Shown piece by piece: positions 55,802 to 63,148 of a DNA stretch of 64,000 bases. Below the pieces are notes generated by a model. That model was not told where the DNA came from. It saw nothing but the letters and a program-made list of their open reading frames with translations, and ran no database searches. This DNA is from Hyphochytrium catenoides (taxonomy: Eukaryota > Protista > Hyphochytriomycota). A program made the position numbers and the translations under genes. The stretch spans positions 1 through 64,000 of the forward strand of contig FLMG01000941.1 of NCBI GenBank assembly GCA_900088475.1. Direction: 5' to 3'. Numbering within the stretch: the stretch's first letter is position 1; each line of letters starts with the position of its first letter.

Positions 55802-55913
55802 NNNNNNNNNNNNNNNNNNNNNNNNNNNNNNNNNNNNNNNNNNNNNNNNNNNNNNNNNNNNNNNNNNNNNNNNNNNNNNNNNNNNNNNNNNNNNNNNNNN
55901 NNNNNNNNNNNNN
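55802..55913. other. Assembly gap
   Basis: Run of N. Confidence 1.
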
Positions 55914-56368: not shown

Positions 56369-59300
56369 ATGACCAAGGGCGGCCAAAAGAAGGAGAGAGA
56401 GAACGGACATAATAAAGCTGTAGCGTCCTCCTCCTGGAACTCCAACAGCAACAAACGACCAAACCAGGATGGCGCTGCCCCAAGCGCAAGCGCAGGGACA
56501 GGTGGAGCTTTGCCGTTATCAGAACAGCAAGAAAAGCCAAAGCCTCGGCCTTCTTCGCCTCGCTCTTCTTCTCCCCCTGTCCACACCAATGGACTTGGCA
56601 AGCCTCCTGGGGAGAGGAAAGGAAGGAGGGAACCAATAATGCGACAGGATTCACTCAGGACGAAACTGAGGAAATTGGCAATGGAGGAAGACTTTCCAGC
56701 CTCCGACGGCTTGGACTCTAGCACAATCCTCTCACCGAAGATCAAGGACTGCACGATGGGTGATGGCTCTTCAGGCGTCTCTTCTCCTCCTCCCGCTCTC
56801 AAAGCAGGTGTGATTAGCTCTCCTTCTCGCACTTGGTTTATCATCGTTGCTTGACCCATCTTTCGGTCCTCCTCTTCCTTAGTTGCTAACGCTAGTTTCC
56901 TTGCTTCGAGTGGACAAGCGTGCACACTCCCGTCTGGTGTTGCTCTACTTCGATTTTGCCGCGTTATCACCTCCATCCCATTTTCTTGCCTTGCTGGAAG
57001 CTTAGTACGCCCTCCTCTTATCCCCAAGATAGACTGATCGTCTCCTTTCGCTCTAGAGTTGTACAGCTTCGCCTCTTTCTCACTCCTTTCAACTTCTTGC
57101 TATAGGAAGTAAGGATCATACTTCTTTCTCTGTGAGGAAGAGAAAGCTCTTGAAGGCCGCAAAGGATATGAAGGAGATGGAGGCCACTAGCCCAGCGGCA
57201 ACAGTCCCAACATCTAAGGGTTCGCCAAGTGTCTCTCCGGGCCGCAAGGTGGACCGCTCTGCAAGCAAAAGTCCTTCTAGATTCGTGGAGGTTGCATCGT
57301 CGGTGGTGGCGAGCCGAAAAGGTTACTTCTTGCATCTCTTCTCATCTATTCTCTGGCCGTCTTTATCTTTACGGTTTACTACGTCACCTCTTGGCCCTCT
57401 TTGGTCTCTATATCCTTTATCTCTGTACTATCGTTAGTCTCCCTTCTCTCTCGCGGCTCAAGAACCCTGCAGCTGTCTGTACACTTATTGCACTGTCGCT
57501 GTTCATAGTCGCTCTCGGGGTCTGCTTCTCATCTTCCCACTGTGTAGACTTGGGTGTACTTCTCTTAGGTTAACGCGTTTCACTGTCCTTTCTTCTTAAA
57601 CGACTTGTTCAGAAACCTATGCTGCAGGGTGTTTAGCCTCGTTTGCTATATTCTCCTTGTCAAGTCATCTATCGCTTCCTTGGTCTAGGCCACACATCCT
57701 CTTTTCTATTGTCATAGTGGGCCTCATATCTACCATAACCTTGGGCCTCATATCTCCTGACAATCGTCTTTTAAATCGCGTTGCTGTTTAGCTGCTCAGA
57801 AGTTCAAGTCAAGCTGGGTCAACCCTGCGGCTTCGCATCCCACAGACTGGTCGGTGGTGGGTGGGATCCACTTGAAGAAGAAGAAACTGAGTCTGCAGCA
57901 ATTCTTTTCAGAGTATAGAAAGATGAAGAGAGATGACTTCTACCAGGAGTTGGTTGTCTACATCGTCGTCATCTACCTTATGATGTCTATGTTTTGGTGG
58001 CTACCTATGCACCAGGTTTGTTTAGCTTCTCCTAATCGCGCGACTACTGCGCATCACTCGTTGCTCAATAACTCTTCCTGGGACGACTGGACGCATGCCC
58101 TCATCGCTCCCTTCTCTTTTATGGGGCTTCGTAATCGGGGTCAATGTACGTACTTTGCCTAATTTTAACCGTATCCTTCTGGCACCCTCCGTCCATCGCA
58201 GAGTTATGAGCAATCAGATGTCTTGAAAAGCTTCATTTGCAAGGAGGGAACGGAGGTCTGTTCCTTCGATACTGTGAACGACATATATGGCTTTCTTCGG
58301 CATATGGAGGAGAACATCTGCGACGACTCAGACAGTGATGCCAATCTCCGGCGATGGTACCGGGTTGGGACGATGCAGGTAGGCGCAGAGGATTAGAGTG
58401 AGAGTAGAAAGAAGAAGAAAGAGGAAAAAGTCTAGAAGTGCCCCTTCTCCTCCATTTACGAAATATATGCTTTCCGGGCGCCTCCCTTACCATCTCAGCT
58501 CGTGGCTTCGTATTGTTCTGCTATGGGTAAACACTGGTCCTCATTAAGCCCTCCATCTCTCTTCCTCTGCCTCTCCCTTTTTTTTTCTTTAGCTACGTCA
58601 AGTTCGAGTTCAACGCTCTAACTGTCGGATAGCTGGTGCAGTAGAGTATCCGTGTTATCCGCAGTATAGCCCTGAGATAGAAGAGAGAGCAGCGATAGTA
58701 GGCAAGACGTCAGGGAAGAATTACACCTGGAGAGATGGCTTTGGAGAGTTGGAAACCACCACGCAAGTGCGCTTCCTCTCTGTGATTAACTATCTGCAAG
58801 CGGATGACGCCGTGCCAGACACTTTTGGACGTGGTAGGGAGTCTTCTGCCTACAGTCTCCCGAGACAAATCCCTAAAGCTAGTCTGCCCATTCTCGGTCT
58901 TGGGTCCAGTCTTTGTCTAGAACCTACGGCTCGTCCAACTCATTTCATTCTCCCATTCCGGTGCCTACATTAGCTCTTTTTCGCCCTGACGCTTCTACCT
59001 CTCTTTCAAAAAAACAGGCGGCTTCTCCTCTTATCTATGTTCGAACTCGTCTCCCTCTGTCAGTGAGCTGGAGGAAGACCAGTGGATCAATCTTGGCACT
59101 CGTGTCGTGTCCTTGGATTTTACACTCGTGAACCCTACGACCGAAATGTTTACCGTGGGGAGGCATATATTTGCCATCTCTCCATCGGGACATATAAATC
59201 ATAAGCTGCAGGTACGGAAAGACAAATTATCTGTCTGGATCGCTGTTATTGGCTGCCGACAGCGTATATACAAGACCTTCTCTCTCTCGGCTACCAAGAG

Positions 59301-60001
59301 AGAAGGCGCAAAACTTCTTCCTCTGCTAAGACGCTGGTCTTTACTTCACTTAACCTTTCATCTTTACCGCCTTTTCTTTCTCTTAATGCTCACGTGATCT
59401 TCCTTTCCTTGTTGATGGTAGACTACAACGATGAGGCTCGTCTCCACCTGGCTTGACGGACATCAGCAGAAGGCAGACCGTTATGTGTTCGCTCTATGGA
59501 TCTTTCTCTCGCTTCAGCTACTTCTCACGTGTCTGAGAGAGAGCAAGAATATCAGAAAGATGGGGCTCTCTCCTTATTTGTCCTCAGACTTTTGGAATGT
59601 GTTTGAGATGATCCAGATGACTCTCCTAGCACAGCTCCTCTTCTCTGTGTACTCTTTCTACGCGCTCTCTTCTCAGCTCATAGATGGTCTGGGGCTTCTT
59701 TTGAAGACTTCCAATGGATACGTTGATATGTACCCTGTCATGGACTCTTTTTTGCAGGTAAAGTTGCATTGCCAGAGAGGAATAGATATTGCCCTTAGTC
59801 TGCCTTCAGACCTGCATGATAGCTTCGTTTTTGTTGTCTCTCCTCCTTTCCCTTAGACTCATCCAGCTATCTTGGAAGACTAAAAGCACTGCTATCTTTT
59901 CGACCTTTCTCTCTTCTCTCCTTTTTCAATCTTTCTTTGTCGAATCTGTTGTCTCCGCTTTACCCCTCTGTCGCCCCCTCTCTCCCCCATTTCTCGCTCT
60001 T

Positions 60002-60036
<35 letters not shown>

Positions 60037-63000
60037 GTCTTTCTCTCTCACACACACAAACACGCACCCGCACCCCGCACTTCATGCGGCCTCATGTGTC
60101 GCTTCAGTTGGCGGATTTGGCGGCTGTCAACGCCTTGCTCGGCTTGCTCAAAGTCTTTCGCTTCCTCCGTATGAACACGACCCTCAACCTCCTTTGGGCA
60201 TCTCTGGGGATGGCTCTCAAAGATCTGGCAGGGTTTATGGTCATCTTCTCCCTTATATTCTGCGCCTACGCGGCTATGGGATGCCTGGCTTTTGGCTTCT
60301 ACCTTGCAGAGTTCCACGACTTCAGAAGCTCCTTCTCTACCTGCTTTCAGATGTTAGCTGGTGATTTTGATTATGAGAAGCTTCTGGAGGCAAACCCGAG
60401 ACTAGCTCCGATATTCTTTGGAAGCTTCGTAGTGCTCTGCCTGCAGATTCTGGTGAGCTGCAAGAGATAGAAATGGGTGGAGTGCGTCAGTAGCGGCTTG
60501 AGCGGAACACACAGCAACAGAAAGAAAGAGAGGAGGTGCAAGCGGGAAAAAGGAGTGGAGAATAAGGAGACAGACAAGAGGAAGAACTTCCCTCTGATTC
60601 CTCTTTGTCTATGCTATTTCCTTCTAGAATGCTCGTCTGCGGGCTGTGCCGGGTTGGTTTTATGGTGTTGTCGTGTTCTCTGACATAATCCGTTTCATGT
60701 CCTATCCAGGTGAACATGTTTGTGGCAATTCTTTCCGAGTTCTATGAAAAGAGCAGGGATGAGGCTCAGAACCTGAAGGATGTGGACGTGGAGTACGACG
60801 TCTATAAGCGTATCTCAGAGTTCCTCCTCTCTCTCTCACCCACGGTGGTCCTTACTGAGCCCTTGCAGCTCAGTCCTGGGGAGATCGTGCGCCTTATCTC
60901 CACCAATCTTATGGACAAAGAGGTCAAGCGCCAGAGGGCAAAGAAGAGGTTCAGGGGCGCTGTGTGGAGAGTCCTGGCACTCCTGAGGTTAGCGTCCTTT
61001 CATTTTTTCTGACTTTCCCCTCATCTTTCCGCCCTCTCACTTATTCTTTGTCTCTCTCCTTTTCCTTGTATGAGCATTCACTATCTTTTTGAAAATATAA
61101 TGTCACTCATTCTTCTCTTGCATTGACTTATCTCTGCCTGCTCAAGAGCTGCTCACCCGTCCGCTGGCTGTGCTAAAGTTATCCCTTAATGCTTGTCCCT
61201 TTCTGGCCGGGCTTCGTTCCTTTTCAAGCTTTCGAGCAATGACCGCGGACCCTGGGTTCGCGTTCAAACTTATGATGGCTAACTGCTTGCATTTTGCCAA
61301 CAGGTTTGGCGTCAAGTTTGATCGCCGCCTGATCACTGACCAGCATCGGGAGACGAGCTATGATCCGAGCGATAAGGAGTTGGCGACTCACATTCCTCTC
61401 TCAGATAATTTTGACCATCGCACCATCAAGGAGATGCTGCCTGCCGGGATCACTATCAAGCTAAAGGGAGACTCGCTCATTGGAGACGACATTACTTTGA
61501 AGGTTGTAAGGCACAGCGCCTTGTCCACAGAGTGCAAAGGTACGCCAGCGAGAATACTTGAGAGAAACCCATGGCGGAAAGGAGTCAAGAGTTGCTGAGG
61601 CACGTAGAAGTGGAGAGATTCACGCACTCAACCTACGTTTAAGTGCATGAAGCTGACAGAGGGAATAGTGTTGACAGCTCATACCTTTCGTTACATGCTT
61701 TGTGTCTTGATATGCTTTCGTTCCCCATTTTGCCTCTTATGAGGTGGACGTTCGGCCTTATCCCTCTGTATGGCCCTTGTATGAGCCTACGTATGTCGCT
61801 GCTGACTCCTGCTCACTTTCTTCTCCATTGTCTTTCTTGCAGTTATGGACTCCGTCTATCCCGGGATCGAGAGTCTTGAACTCGTAGGAGGAGAAAGGTT
61901 GATCATTCCCTCAACTCTCTTCTGTCTTCACCTCCTCCGCACGGCGTTCAAGGTCCTCTTACACTTTATTGGGAAGGCGTTCTCCTGGCGCCACCCTATG
62001 GACCACCAGTTGGTAGACGAGTATCTGCTGTATAGATTGCTTCAAAGCGCTCAACACGAGGGATGCGAATCTCTCCGGTTTGATGAACTGCATAGAAGGC
62101 TGGACATGATCGTGAGGAAGGATAGGAGTCGAGCCACTATATCTGCGGGAGAAGTTAACAAGGAGACAGCGCTGGTAATGTACCGCTTCAGACGGTGTCT
62201 GATTGACATGCCCAGCAGAGAGAAAGAAGGCCACAACTACAGGCCAAAGCCTCTCGATACCTCTTCAGTGGATCTTGGATCCTTGGAGTTTTTAGCAGAT
62301 CTTCTATCGGAGAATTGTCACGAGCTTTGGTCGCTCGAGAGAATCAAGCAAGGGTGGAGATATGGCCCTGAGAGAGATGACAAAAAGAAGCTGCATCCCA
62401 ATCTGATCCCTTTCCATGTTCTTCCTGAGGAAGAGAAAGAGTATGATCGTCGCACATCTGTGGAAAGCATCAAGACTATCCTGATGCTGCAGTTCCAGAT
62501 CCAGCGAGTCTCCACAGCCACGCTTAAGACGAAGGGATTGCCAACGTTTGACACCGTGAGAAAGCTCACTTCTTCCTCAGAAGGGGATGATGGTAAGGTA
62601 GCAGGCGTTTAGGGTCTTAGCTCTTTCGTGCCTTATGTATGTGGTGGTTGCCCTTGCTTCCAAGGCCTCTATAGTGCTTGATCCACTCTTTATCTCTACC
62701 ACCTGTTTCCCTCTTGATATGGTTTCCTCGTGGCTCTCTTCGTGTCTCCTCTCTCTTTGCTAACCCACTCTCTCTGTCATGTGCCCTGACTTTCTTTCTG
62801 CTCATGACCCACGTGTTCCTACTAGCCAATACCGAGATCGATTCGATCAACGGTACCAAGTACCGTCCTCGTCCCATAGAGACCGACCAGATTGACTTGC
62901 CTAAACGGTTGGTAGCTCTCGCAGATCTTATAGCTGAGAACGCGCATGAGGTCTGGTCTAAAGGAAGGATGGAGGAGGGCTGGACCTACGGGCCCGATAG

Positions 63001-63148
63001 AGATGACAAGGCCAAGAAACACCCTTGTCTAGTGCCCTACGTGTTCCTTACTGAGCACGAGAAAGAGTATGACCTCAACACTGCGATGGGAACACTGAAG
63101 ATGCTTCTGGCGATGGGCTTTCAGATCACCGACAAGACGGGTGGATAG
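56369..63148 (+). CDS. Polycystin (PKD2/TRPP) cation channel with two C-terminal RyR repeats (PKDRR-type), 12 exons
   Basis: Exons 56369-56807, 57106-57321, 57792-58015, 58202-58378, 58593-58833, 59018-59211, 59422-59757, 60108-60452, 60710-60987, 61304-61539, 61843-62592, 62826-63148. PKD motifs LRQVRV..C, WINLGTRVVSLDFT, DFWNVFE, LKVFRFL, FQMLAGDFDY, LVNMFVAIL. RyR motifs ENCHELW...QGWRYGPERDDKKKLHPNLIPF and ENAHEVW...EGWTYGPDRDDKAKKHPCLVPY. Confidence 0.92.

What the first reader, a model, noticed from the sequence alone, without database searches (positions are those of the whole stretch)
56369..63148. Polycystin channel fused to tandem ryanodine-receptor repeats (PKDRR)
Seen: a complete 12-exon gene with a PKD2 TOP domain, 6TM pore and two RyR repeats (~62235-62500 and ~62860-63125). 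Known: this architecture is described as PKDRR in oomycetes and has been regarded as largely lineage-restricted. Inference: the intron-rich, microsatellite-laden gene structures here look unlike typical Phytophthora/Pythium genes. This may extend PKDRR to another lineage and point to a Ca2+ channel gated through its RyR repeats.
Basis: partly seen in the sequence, partly recalled or inferred. Interest (0 to 1): 0.75.

Follow-up and report, generated by a model that had tools for sequence, protein, structure and literature searches.

The report
Polycystin channel with ryanodine-receptor repeats
This is an intact 12-exon gene of the water-mould relative Hyphochytrium catenoides for a polycystin-type cation channel ending in two ryanodine-receptor repeats; the family was published as unique to oomycetes, but it is also present here, in glaucophyte algae and in the flagellate Diphylleia.

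Summary
On the + strand, 56369-63148, 12 GT-AG exons give one open frame of 1252 codons. It holds a polycystin TOP domain, a PKD_channel pore and two RyR domains (62238-62504, 62861-63130). Every exon junction matches continuous sequence in full-length orthologues.

The host is not an oomycete. The assembly encodes HcKCR1 at 100% identity and matches the published record count, so it is Hyphochytrium catenoides, from the sister group of oomycetes.

The gene is the PKDRR-B orthologue (five residues after the last repeat; sister to all oomycete-type B in two trees). A second locus on contig C244 is the PKDRR-A orthologue, so the A/B split predates the hyphochytrid-oomycete divergence.

The same architecture occurs in Gloeochaete, Cyanophora and Diphylleia. 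On the channel part alone, all but one of the sequences in the fusion clade carry the repeats. "Oomycete-only" (Zheng 2020) therefore fails.

Mechanism (inferred): a tetrameric cation channel, probably Ca2+-permeable, whose C-terminal repeat pair folds like the RyR Repeat12 nucleotide sensor and keeps its ligand-contact residues in both repeats.

The scan noted the same architecture elsewhere in this genome (s1-360182), without follow-up. Verdict: a new member of a known kind, of moderate interest.

The parts
56369..56807 (+). Exon 1: ATG and a low-complexity, poorly conserved cytosolic N-terminus
   Evidence: In-frame stop 6 codons upstream of the ATG; GT donor; phase 1. Residues 1-87 do not align to orthologues.
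57106..57321 (+). Exon 2: cytosolic N-terminal region
   Evidence: AG acceptor and AAG|GTTACT donor. The E2/E3 junction reproduces the continuous orthologue motif (VV.S.RAA..F).
57792..58015 (+). Exon 3: pre-S1 region and transmembrane helix S1
   Evidence: 32-42% identity to residues 146-215 of P0001 and 202-261 of P0004; junctions match orthologues.
58202..58378 (+). Exon 4: first part of the extracellular TOP (polycystin) domain
   Evidence: Colinear with P0001 217-271; phase 0 on both sides.
58593..58833 (+). Exon 5: TOP domain, with the conserved LRQVRV motif
   Evidence: Aligned to the orthologue motif RQVRV; 46% identity to P0001 272-325.
59018..59211 (+). Exon 6: end of the TOP domain
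   Evidence: Pfam Polycystin_dom E 7.7e-10, profile positions 124-198 of 199.
59422..59757 (+). Exon 7: transmembrane helices S2-S3
   Evidence: Colinear with P0001 484-537 and P0004 463-563. In P0001 this stretch lies inside PKD_channel 465-692.
60108..60452 (+). Exon 8: S4, S5, pore helix, selectivity filter LAGD (Asp codon 60363-60365) and start of S6
   Evidence: PKD_channel E 1.5e-24. Aligns to PKD2L1 (5z1w) and PKD2 at E 2e-16, with the filter G-D and the following F-D-Y conserved. Filter acid kept in B orthologues.
60710..60987 (+). Exon 9: end of S6 (VNMFVAILSEFYE) and start of the conserved cytosolic linker
   Evidence: 58-60% identity to P0001 and P0004; the E8/E9 and E9/E10 junctions are identical in register to orthologues.
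61304..61539 (+). Exon 10: conserved linker, strand-rich, with no Pfam family
   Evidence: 49-55% identity to P0001 772-848 and P0004 770-846; no Pfam hit even at E 10.
61843..62592 (+). Exon 11: helical linker, RyR repeat 1 (62238-62504; Trp codon 62328-62330) and inter-repeat loop with an R-K-L-T-S-S-S motif (62559-62579)
   Evidence: RyR E 5.7e-29. phmmer top hit P0001 E 3.4e-98. Loop motif aligned to RRxS in orthologues.
62826..63148 (+). Exon 12: RyR repeat 2 (62861-63130; Trp codon 62954-62956), five more residues, then stop TAG 63146-63148
   Evidence: RyR E 1e-34. Best PDB sequence matches are RyR Repeat12 constructs and RyR2 residues 858-950.

Best explanation
SHOWN. This is the Hyphochytrium catenoides orthologue of the oomycete PKDRR-B protein. 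It is one 12-exon gene for a 1252-residue protein. From the N-terminus it has a disordered cytosolic region, S1, an extracellular polycystin TOP domain, S2-S6 with a polycystin-2-type pore (filter L-A-G-D), a conserved cytosolic linker of about 300 residues with no known domain, and two RyR repeats at the very C-terminus. The genome also carries the PKDRR-A orthologue on contig C244. The A/B duplication is therefore older than the hyphochytrid-oomycete split.

INFERRED. The protein forms a tetrameric, probably Ca2+-permeable, non-selective cation channel like PKD2 and PKD2L1. The oomycete orthologue is reported at the cell surface. The two RyR repeats pack into one pseudo-symmetric clamshell like the Repeat12 (RY12) domain of ryanodine receptors. 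That domain binds ADP or ATP in its cleft and closes on binding. Both repeats here keep the ligand-contact signature: His at -3, Trp at 0, Arg/Lys at +4, Arg at +15, His at +22 and Asp at +39.

The likeliest working model is that an adenine nucleotide or ADP-ribose-type ligand binds the C-terminal clamshell, and its closure is passed through the conserved linker to S6 to modulate gating. A basophilic-kinase motif in the inter-repeat loop would add phosphorylation control.

Rough odds: gene identity and orthology about 0.95; cation channel about 0.8; repeat pair as a nucleotide-type ligand sensor that controls gating about 0.35.
For: Domains. One gene: canonical GT-AG introns with matching phases and a single stop. 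Exons 3-12 map in order onto single orthologue proteins P0001 and P0004. Single BLASTP alignments of 1117-1214 residues to P0222 and P0223. Every junction reproduces continuous orthologue sequence, for example VLALLR|FGVKFDRR and LQIL|VNMFVAILSEFYE. A second colinear PKD + 2xRyR locus lies on C244. Fusions are present as single transcripts in the Diphylleia and Gloeochaete transcriptomes. Host: HcKCR1 identical over both exons; three channelrhodopsin loci; 4759 records against 4758 scaffolds plus mitochondrion, and introns of about 208 nt. Orthology: the window gene is sister to all oomycete-type B proteins, 97/96* on full length and 98/95* on the channel part alone. C244 falls in the A clade, 99/98* and 100/100*. 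Five residues follow the last RyR domain, which is the B criterion of PMC7399828. Downstream microsynteny with a TfR-like gene is shared with the scaffold of P0223. Pore: alignment to PKD2L1 and PKD2 with the filter Gly-Asp kept. Repeat pair: the AF2 model of the orthologue P0222 C-terminus has pLDDT above 85 in both repeats and matches RyR Repeat12 crystal structures at TM 0.85-0.90 over about 235 columns. Ligand residues of RyR3 R12 (Trp880, Lys884, Arg895) and of phage RyDEP (H75, W78, H100, D117) have counterparts in both repeats of this protein and of all stramenopile PKDRR proteins checked. RY12 is an ADP sensor. P. infestans PKDRR-B is made, multimeric and at the cell surface (abstract of PMC7399828).
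Against: The joined protein could not be sent to any database or folding tool. The structural model is therefore of an orthologue about 48% identical overall and 54-66% identical to the window's C-terminal exon pieces. [quoted passage not shown] The conserved signature residues are the most conserved positions of the whole Pfam family, so they may be kept for folding rather than ligand binding. The Arg of RyR repeat 2 that contacts the triphosphate (RyR3 Arg1018) is Cys here. The offsets to RyDEP residues were matched by motif position, not by direct alignment. The linker that would have to transmit the signal has no confident fold on its own (pLDDT 53.7).
Confidence: 0.6

Rival explanations
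1. The RyR repeat pair is not a small-ligand sensor. It is a regulatory or scaffolding module, for example a phosphorylation-controlled docking site or a tetramer-stabilising cytosolic ring, as the RyR Repeat34 phosphorylation domain is usually described.
For: The inter-repeat loop of B orthologues carries a recurrent R-[RK]-x-S/T motif followed by acidic residues; here it reads V-R-K-L-T-S-S-S. It sits at the position of the RyR phosphorylation loop between repeats 3 and 4 (my own knowledge of the RyR literature). [quoted passage not shown]
Against: By sequence and by fold, the best matches are Repeat12 rather than Repeat34. The R12 ligand-contact residues are complete in both repeats. The two roles do not exclude each other.
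Confidence: 0.3
2. These are two neighbouring genes: a polycystin channel ending after S6 or the linker, and a separate small RyR-domain protein. They would be wrongly joined here and in database gene models.
For: No RNA evidence was obtained for this locus. Introns 9 and 10 are 316 and 303 nt, long enough to hide signals.
Against: Phases match across all junctions with no stop. Exons 9, 10 and 11 are 49-60% identical to continuous stretches of orthologues, including intronless genes (P0223 is one 3642-nt ORF) and assembled transcripts. The same order is kept at the second locus, C244. All five RyR-domain matches that the family search found in the genome lie in these two loci (that search's counts are lower bounds).
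Confidence: 0.03
3. The contig comes from an ordinary oomycete, or from a contaminant, so the gene is simply a known PKDRR.
For: The closest named relatives are oomycete proteins from Pythium, Aphanomyces and Phytophthora.
Against: The best identity to any database protein is only 46-51%. Both paralogues branch outside the oomycete clades with strong support. The gene has 11 introns, whereas P0223 is intronless. The assembly is H. catenoides by HcKCR1 identity and record count. The contig is 461,740 bp long.
Confidence: 0.01
4. The gene is a decaying or unexpressed pseudogene.
For: No expression data were obtained here.
Against: The frame is intact over 1252 codons, all 22 splice sites are canonical, and conservation is strong in the pore, linker and repeats.
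Confidence: 0.03

Closest known systems
PKDRR-B of oomycetes (e.g. Phytophthora infestans PKDRR B; Zheng et al. 2020, PMC7399828)
   Same: Same domain order: TOP, PKD_channel, conserved linker, two RyR domains. The C-terminus ends fewer than 10 residues after the last repeat. The proteins are colinear over about 1150 residues. The window gene is sister to the oomycete B clade in both trees.
   Different: The host is a hyphochytrid, not an oomycete. Overall identity is only 45-51%. There are 11 introns, against an intronless gene in at least one close relative. The inter-repeat loop is much shorter.
Polycystin-2 / PKD2L1 (TRPP channels of animals; PDB 5z1w, 5t4d, 5mke)
   Same: 6TM core with a TOP domain. 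S4 to S6 aligns at E about 1e-16. The filter Gly-Asp and the following F-D-Y are kept, as in PKD2L1.
   Different: Pfam detects no EF-hand in the C-terminal exon pieces (exons 9-12). A coiled coil was not looked for. In their place are a 300-residue linker of unknown fold and the RyR repeat pair. The filter reads L-A-G-D instead of L-G-D.
Repeat12 (RY12) domain of ryanodine receptors (PDB 6uhe, 9l90, 9ls7; PMC12627627, PMC13642953)
   Same: The tandem pair of PF02026 repeats is predicted to form the same clamshell (TM 0.85-0.90). The cleft Trp, the basic residues at +4 and +15, His +22 and Asp +39 are kept.
   Different: Here the pair sits at the C-terminus of a small polycystin channel, not on the corner of a 5000-residue RyR. 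Both repeats look like RyR repeat 1. The repeat-2 Arg that contacts the triphosphate in RyR3 is Cys. The protein shares no other RyR/IP3R domain.
Phage RyR-domain proteins (RyDEP; PMC13232231) and bacterial RyR-domain proteins (PDB 3nrt)
   Same: The same Pfam family. The four ligand-contact positions named for RyDEP (H75, W78, H100, D117) have counterparts at matching offsets in both repeats.
   Different: Those are soluble homodimers that bind or cleave cyclic ADP-ribose signals. Here two covalently linked repeats are tethered to a channel. Neither catalysis nor cADPR binding has been tested.
TRPM2 (a TRP channel gated by ADP-ribose through its C-terminal NUDT9-homology domain; my own knowledge)
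   Same: The analogy is one of working principle: a TRP-superfamily pore with a C-terminal nucleotide-binding module.
   Different: The sensor fold is unrelated (Nudix against RyR repeat) and the TRP subfamily differs. This is a functional analogy, not homology.

Membership tests
PKDRR (Zheng et al. 2016/2020) | Polycystin-type channel domain (PF08016) with a TOP domain (PF20519) | tested here: met
   PKD_channel E 1.5e-24; Polycystin_dom E 7.7e-10.
PKDRR (Zheng et al. 2016/2020) | Two RyR (R) domains C-terminal to the channel in the same polypeptide | tested here: met
   RyR E 5.7e-29 and 1e-34. A single frame runs through 11 phase-consistent GT-AG introns. Colinear with continuous orthologues across every junction. 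This is a computational test only; there is no RNA evidence.
PKDRR subfamily B | C-terminus fewer than 10 residues beyond the last R domain | tested here: met
   The RyR profile ends at 63130 and the last codon ends at 63145, which leaves 5 residues.
PKDRR subfamily B | Groups with oomycete B proteins in a phylogeny | tested here: met
   Sister to all oomycete-type B proteins, 97/96* and 98/95* on channel columns only. The C244 paralogue groups with the A proteins.
PKDRR as published ('only in oomycetes') | Restriction to Oomycota | tested here: not met
   The host is H. catenoides. Pfam-confirmed fusions also occur in Gloeochaete, Cyanophora and Diphylleia. This is a claim about distribution, not a structural criterion, so it does not bar membership.
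TRPP / polycystin-2 channels | 6TM core with an acidic selectivity filter homologous to PKD2/PKD2L1 | tested here: met
   phmmer to 5z1w and 9dwt at E about 2e-16, with filter G-D aligned.
TRPP / polycystin-2 channels | C-terminal EF-hand and coiled coil, as in PKD2 | tested here: not met
   No EF-hand family was found in the pieces holding exons 9-12, at E 0.1 and, for exons 9, 10 and the first half of 11, even at E 10. A coiled coil was not looked for. The sampled non-fusion relatives do carry EF-hands.
RyR/IP3R channel superfamily | RIH, MIR, Ins145_P3_rec or SPRY domains and a RyR/IP3R-type pore | tested here: not met
   Only PF02026 is shared; no other RyR/IP3R family appears in any exon piece or in the orthologues. 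The database label 'RIR-CaC family' is a misnomer, as Zheng et al. state.
RyR Repeat12-type nucleotide-sensing module | Two PF02026 repeats folded into one pseudo-symmetric clamshell | tested here: met
   AF2 model of the orthologue P0222 C-terminus. Foldseek gives 6uhi TM 0.90 and 9ls7 TM 0.87. This is a proxy; the window protein itself could not be folded because its exons cannot be joined by reference.
RyR Repeat12-type nucleotide-sensing module | Ligand-contact residues present | tested here: met
   His -3, Trp 0, Arg +4, Arg +15, His +22 and Asp +39 are present in both repeats, set against the residues listed in PMC12627627 and PMC13232231. The RyR3 Arg1018 equivalent is Cys.
RyR Repeat12-type nucleotide-sensing module | Actual binding of ADP, ATP or ADPR-type ligands, coupled to gating | not testable with these tools
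   This needs ITC or thermal shift on the recombinant repeat pair and electrophysiology.

The most novel reading that the evidence does not exclude
The PKD-channel/RyR-repeat fusion is not an oomycete invention. It is an old eukaryotic channel family with a single origin, kept in pseudofungi (A and B paralogues), glaucophytes and collodictyonids (CRuMs) and lost elsewhere. Its C-terminal Repeat12-like clamshell makes it an adenine-nucleotide-, ADP-ribose- or cADPR-gated polycystin channel. That would be a second, independent solution to ligand gating of a TRP channel by a nucleotide, alongside TRPM2. It would also be a possible ancestor context for the RyR repeats of animal ryanodine receptors.
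Probability: 0.25. Interest if true: 0.75.

Novelty: new member of a known kind. Interest (0 to 1): 0.5.

Why it matters
PKDRR proteins have been promoted as oomycete-specific targets for new anti-oomycete agents, on the claim that no other cellular organism has them (PMC7399828). The data here show the family in the sister lineage, with both paralogues. They also show, more surprisingly, the same architecture in glaucophyte algae and in Diphylleia. This changes the evolutionary account from lineage invention to old, patchily retained family, and it qualifies the specificity argument.

No ligand or current is known for any PKDRR. Work from 2025-2026 shows that RyR Repeat12 and phage RyR-domain proteins bind ADP, ATP or cyclic ADP-ribose. 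Combined with the intact ligand-contact signature in both repeats here, that turns 'unknown function' into a direct experiment: apply these nucleotides to the channel or to its isolated tail. H. catenoides is culturable and already a source of well-behaved heterologously expressed channels (HcKCR1). Its PKDRR may therefore be a better expression candidate than the P. infestans protein, which failed.

Tried and rejected

2. Joined spliced protein. All database searches used single exons or open frames by reference.

3. The default mixture-model tree was killed by the sandbox. Both trees therefore use LG+G4. The two long PKD-only outgroup rows are unreliable.

4. The H. catenoides database protein for this gene was not found. 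P0222 and P0223 looked like candidates but are only 46-48% identical.

5. The linker (S6 to RyR1) has no Pfam family even at E 10. AF2 on the linker alone gave pLDDT 53.7, so no fold search was run on it.

6. The ESM Atlas feature search with a Diphylleia fusion returned only generic polycystin clusters.

7. The word search with the Gloeochaete channel region gave only 9 hits, and the one with a non-fusion relative gave 20. Non-fusion sampling for the single-origin test is therefore thin: no animal PKD2 and no Cafeteria.

8. I considered an alternative short intron inside exon 9 (about 60810-60868) and rejected it. It would shift the frame and destroy a stretch that is conserved in orthologues.

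9. My first E2/E3 junction (57290/57800) was replaced by 57321/57792. The replacement has better splice signals and matches orthologue sequence.
Full report
**1. What is in the sequence**

The region is eukaryotic, with about 49% GC and split coding blocks. I translated the open frames that contain exons, by reference, and scanned them with Pfam.
- Polycystin_dom, E 7.7e-10 (58990-59394).
- PKD_channel, E 1.5e-24, and Ion_trans, E 1.6e-10 (59823-60467).
- RyR, E 5.7e-29 (61806-62609), and RyR, E 1e-34 (62675-63145).

A six-frame family search of the whole assembly puts the two RyR domains at 62238-62504 and 62861-63130.

**2. Gene model**

I read the splice sites from the sequence and checked them by script. 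The result is 12 exons: 56369-56807, 57106-57321, 57792-58015, 58202-58378, 58593-58833, 59018-59211, 59422-59757, 60108-60452, 60710-60987, 61304-61539, 61843-62592 and 62826-63148.
- All 11 introns are GT-AG, 184-470 nt long, and their phases agree.
- The coding sequence is 3759 nt: 1252 codons plus TAG, with no internal stop.
- An in-frame stop lies 6 codons upstream of the ATG.
- A scaffold gap (N run 55802-55913) lies about 450 nt upstream, so the promoter region is incomplete.
- Only one microsatellite-like array lies in the gene, in intron 7.

**3. Is it one gene?**

The evidence is comparative, but it is strong.
- Exons 3 to 12 map in order onto single proteins P0001 (1286 aa) and P0004 (Aphanomyces euteiches, 1223 aa), at 35-67% identity per exon.
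- Inside a sandbox script, the joined model gives single BLASTP alignments of 1117 and 1214 residues to P0222 and P0223.
- At every junction the joined residues reproduce continuous orthologue sequence with no indel. This includes the three junctions that tie the pore to the repeats: LQIL|VNMFVAILSEFYE, VLALLR|FGVKFDRR and LSTECK|V.
- P0223 is a single intronless 3642-nt ORF on an 88-kb metagenome scaffold.
- The Diphylleia and Gloeochaete relatives are assembled transcripts.
- A second colinear locus, with TOP domain, pore, RyR1 and RyR2 in the same order, lies on contig C244, minus strand.
- All five RyR-domain matches that the family search found in the 61-Mb assembly belong to these two loci. 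That search's counts are lower bounds.

**4. The host**

The assembly has 61.0 Mb in 4759 records. The Hyphochytrium catenoides assembly was published as 4758 scaffolds plus a mitochondrial genome. [quoted passage not shown]

The assembly has three channelrhodopsin loci. One of them encodes a protein identical over both exons to HcKCR1, the H. catenoides potassium channelrhodopsin in PDB 8h86 and 8gi8.

The host is therefore H. catenoides. It is a hyphochytrid, and hyphochytrids are grouped with oomycetes as Pseudofungi. This agrees with earlier notes of this scan that call the genome 'oomycete-like'.

**5. Relatives and phylogeny**

A full HMMER pass over 1.84 billion representatives, with exon 11 as query, gave 4094 hits at E up to 0.001. 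BLASTP of each exon against the top 150 picked out those that also contain the channel. Cluster look-ups named them.
- Oomycetes: Aphanomyces, Saprolegnia, Pythium. A word search added Phytophthora, Peronospora, Albugo, Lagenidium, Achlya and Thraustotheca.
- Outside stramenopiles: Gloeochaete wittrockiana (three clusters), Cyanophora paradoxa (two genome gene models, P0063 and P0241) and Diphylleia rotans (three clusters).
- Unnamed metagenome and Logan proteins.

Pfam confirms Polycystin_dom, PKD_channel and two RyR domains in the glaucophyte and Diphylleia proteins scanned. Cyanophora P0063 is truncated at its N-terminus and lacks Polycystin_dom, and the metagenome protein P0126 shows only one RyR stretch. 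P0241 rests on precomputed domains.

I built maximum-likelihood trees under LG+G4. One used full length. The other used only the TOP and 6TM columns, with RyR columns excluded.
- The window gene is sister to all oomycete-type PKDRR-B proteins (97/96* and 98/95*).
- The C244 gene falls in the PKDRR-A clade (99/98* and 100/100*). It also aligns far better to A-type than to B-type proteins (summed bits about 1050 against 410-490).
- The window protein ends 5 residues after the last RyR domain, which is the published B criterion.
- H. catenoides therefore has one A and one B, like most oomycetes, and the duplication predates the split of the two lineages.
- On channel columns alone, all the fusion proteins form one starred clade (99/99*). 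It excludes the sampled EF-hand-type PKD2-like channels of cryptophytes and unnamed sources. One nested protein, P0263, lacks RyR repeats.

The last result fits a single origin of the fusion. However, the non-fusion sample is thin, so I treat a single origin as likely but not shown.

The two-genus glaucophyte clade includes genome-derived models. That argues against contamination.

The PKDRR papers did not examine these taxa and state that the family is found only in oomycetes. I found no paper in the library that notes the wider distribution.

**6. How it probably works**

The pore.
- Exon 8 aligns to PKD2L1 and PKD2 structures at E about 2e-16.
- S4 carries Lys and Arg residues, the pore helix aligns, and the filter reads L-A-G-D where the animal proteins read L-G-D.
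- This is followed by F-D-Y, as in PKD2L1. The filter acid is kept across B orthologues.
- A tetrameric, cation-selective, probably Ca2+-permeable channel is the natural reading.
- The P. infestans orthologue is reported as expressed, multimeric and at the cell surface, but gave no current when expressed heterologously.

The tail. After S6 comes a strongly conserved stretch of about 300 residues (53% mean column identity over 33 sequences). It has no Pfam family. Then come the two repeats.

The fold of the repeat pair.
- The window exons cannot be joined by reference, so I folded the C-terminus of the orthologue P0222. The alignment used for the fold included the window's exon pieces.
- The model has mean pLDDT 76.7, and above 85 in both repeats.
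- Foldseek matches the pair to RyR Repeat12 crystal structures at TM 0.85-0.90 over about 235 columns. Several of these are complexes with AMP-PCP, ADP, ATP or dantrolene.
- By sequence, too, the best RyR match is repeat 1 of Repeat12.

What is known about that fold.
- Repeat12 binds adenine nucleotides between a cleft Trp and basic residues (PMC12627627).
- It acts as an ADP sensor that closes on binding (PMC13642953).
- Phage proteins of the same Pfam family bind or cleave cyclic ADP-ribose signals through His, Trp, His and Asp contacts (PMC13232231).

Conservation here.
- Counted from the cleft Trp, both repeats of the window protein have His -3, Trp 0, Arg +4, Arg +15, His +22 and Asp +39.
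- So do both repeats of the stramenopile A and B proteins checked whose repeats could be read in register. For the C244 paralogue, pieced together from alignment fragments, the offsets could not be read. For P0094 only one repeat was found, and it has Leu at +4.
- In glaucophytes and Diphylleia the second repeat has lost the +15 Arg.

From this I infer a nucleotide-type ligand sensor that modulates gating through the linker. I put this at about 0.35.

Weak points of that inference.
- These residues are the most conserved of the family in any case.
- The repeat-2 Arg that contacts the triphosphate in RyR3 is Cys here.
- The offsets to the phage protein were matched by motif position, not by direct alignment.
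- No PKDRR current is known.

A recurrent R-[RK]-x-S/T motif in the inter-repeat loop (here R-K-L-T-S-S-S, 62559-62579) suggests added phosphorylation control.

**7. Verdict**

The gene is a new member of a known kind. The more interesting results lie beyond the window. Both PKDRR paralogues predate the oomycetes, the 'oomycete-only' claim fails against public data, and recent Repeat12 biology gives the family a testable ligand hypothesis.

Noticed in passing
G000 contig C244, minus strand, about 10983-4104 (loci L011, L014): A second PKD-channel + 2xRyR gene lies in the same genome. It is colinear with the window gene and is the PKDRR-A orthologue. RyR repeat 1 is split by an intron, and further coding sequence follows repeat 2.
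   Followed up: partly
G000 C4384 about 65146-68798, minus strand (just beyond the window end; locus L025): A transferrin-receptor-like (M28/PA/TFR_dimer) gene lies convergent and immediately downstream of the PKDRR-B gene. The same neighbour in the same orientation follows the intronless orthologue P0223 on an 88-kb metagenome scaffold (L021 6647-8541). This is conserved microsynteny between distant relatives.
   Followed up: partly
window 55802-55913: A scaffold gap (112 N) lies about 450 nt upstream of the start codon, so the promoter and 5' UTR of this gene are incompletely assembled.
   Followed up: no
G000 C1935:17028-17438 and C48:3690-4097 (loci L012, L013): Two further, very divergent PKD_channel loci have no RyR repeats nearby (E 2.8e-9 each). 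They sit on long branches in the tree and have not been characterised.
   Followed up: partly
L019 364-2034, minus strand (G000 C2531): The HcKCR1 locus can be read through as one 557-codon open frame. The stretch between the two PDB-matching parts (residues 195-431) has no stop, so the presumed intron happens to be open in frame.
   Followed up: no
P0263 (Logan, 1023 aa): This polycystin channel nests inside the fusion clade on channel columns, yet it has about 460 C-terminal residues with no RyR repeat. It is either a secondary loss or a truncated gene call.
   Followed up: partly
window 59990-60049: A (TCTC)n/(TTTCTCTCTC)n array followed by a short CA-rich run lies in intron 7. It is the only microsatellite-like array in the gene.
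   Followed up: yes
same genome, other pieces (notes s1-360134, s1-352535 and others): Earlier notes describe several channel-less polycystin-1-like receptors in this genome. In animals polycystin-1 pairs with polycystin-2, so these are candidate partners of the two PKDRR channels. This was not examined here.
   Followed up: no
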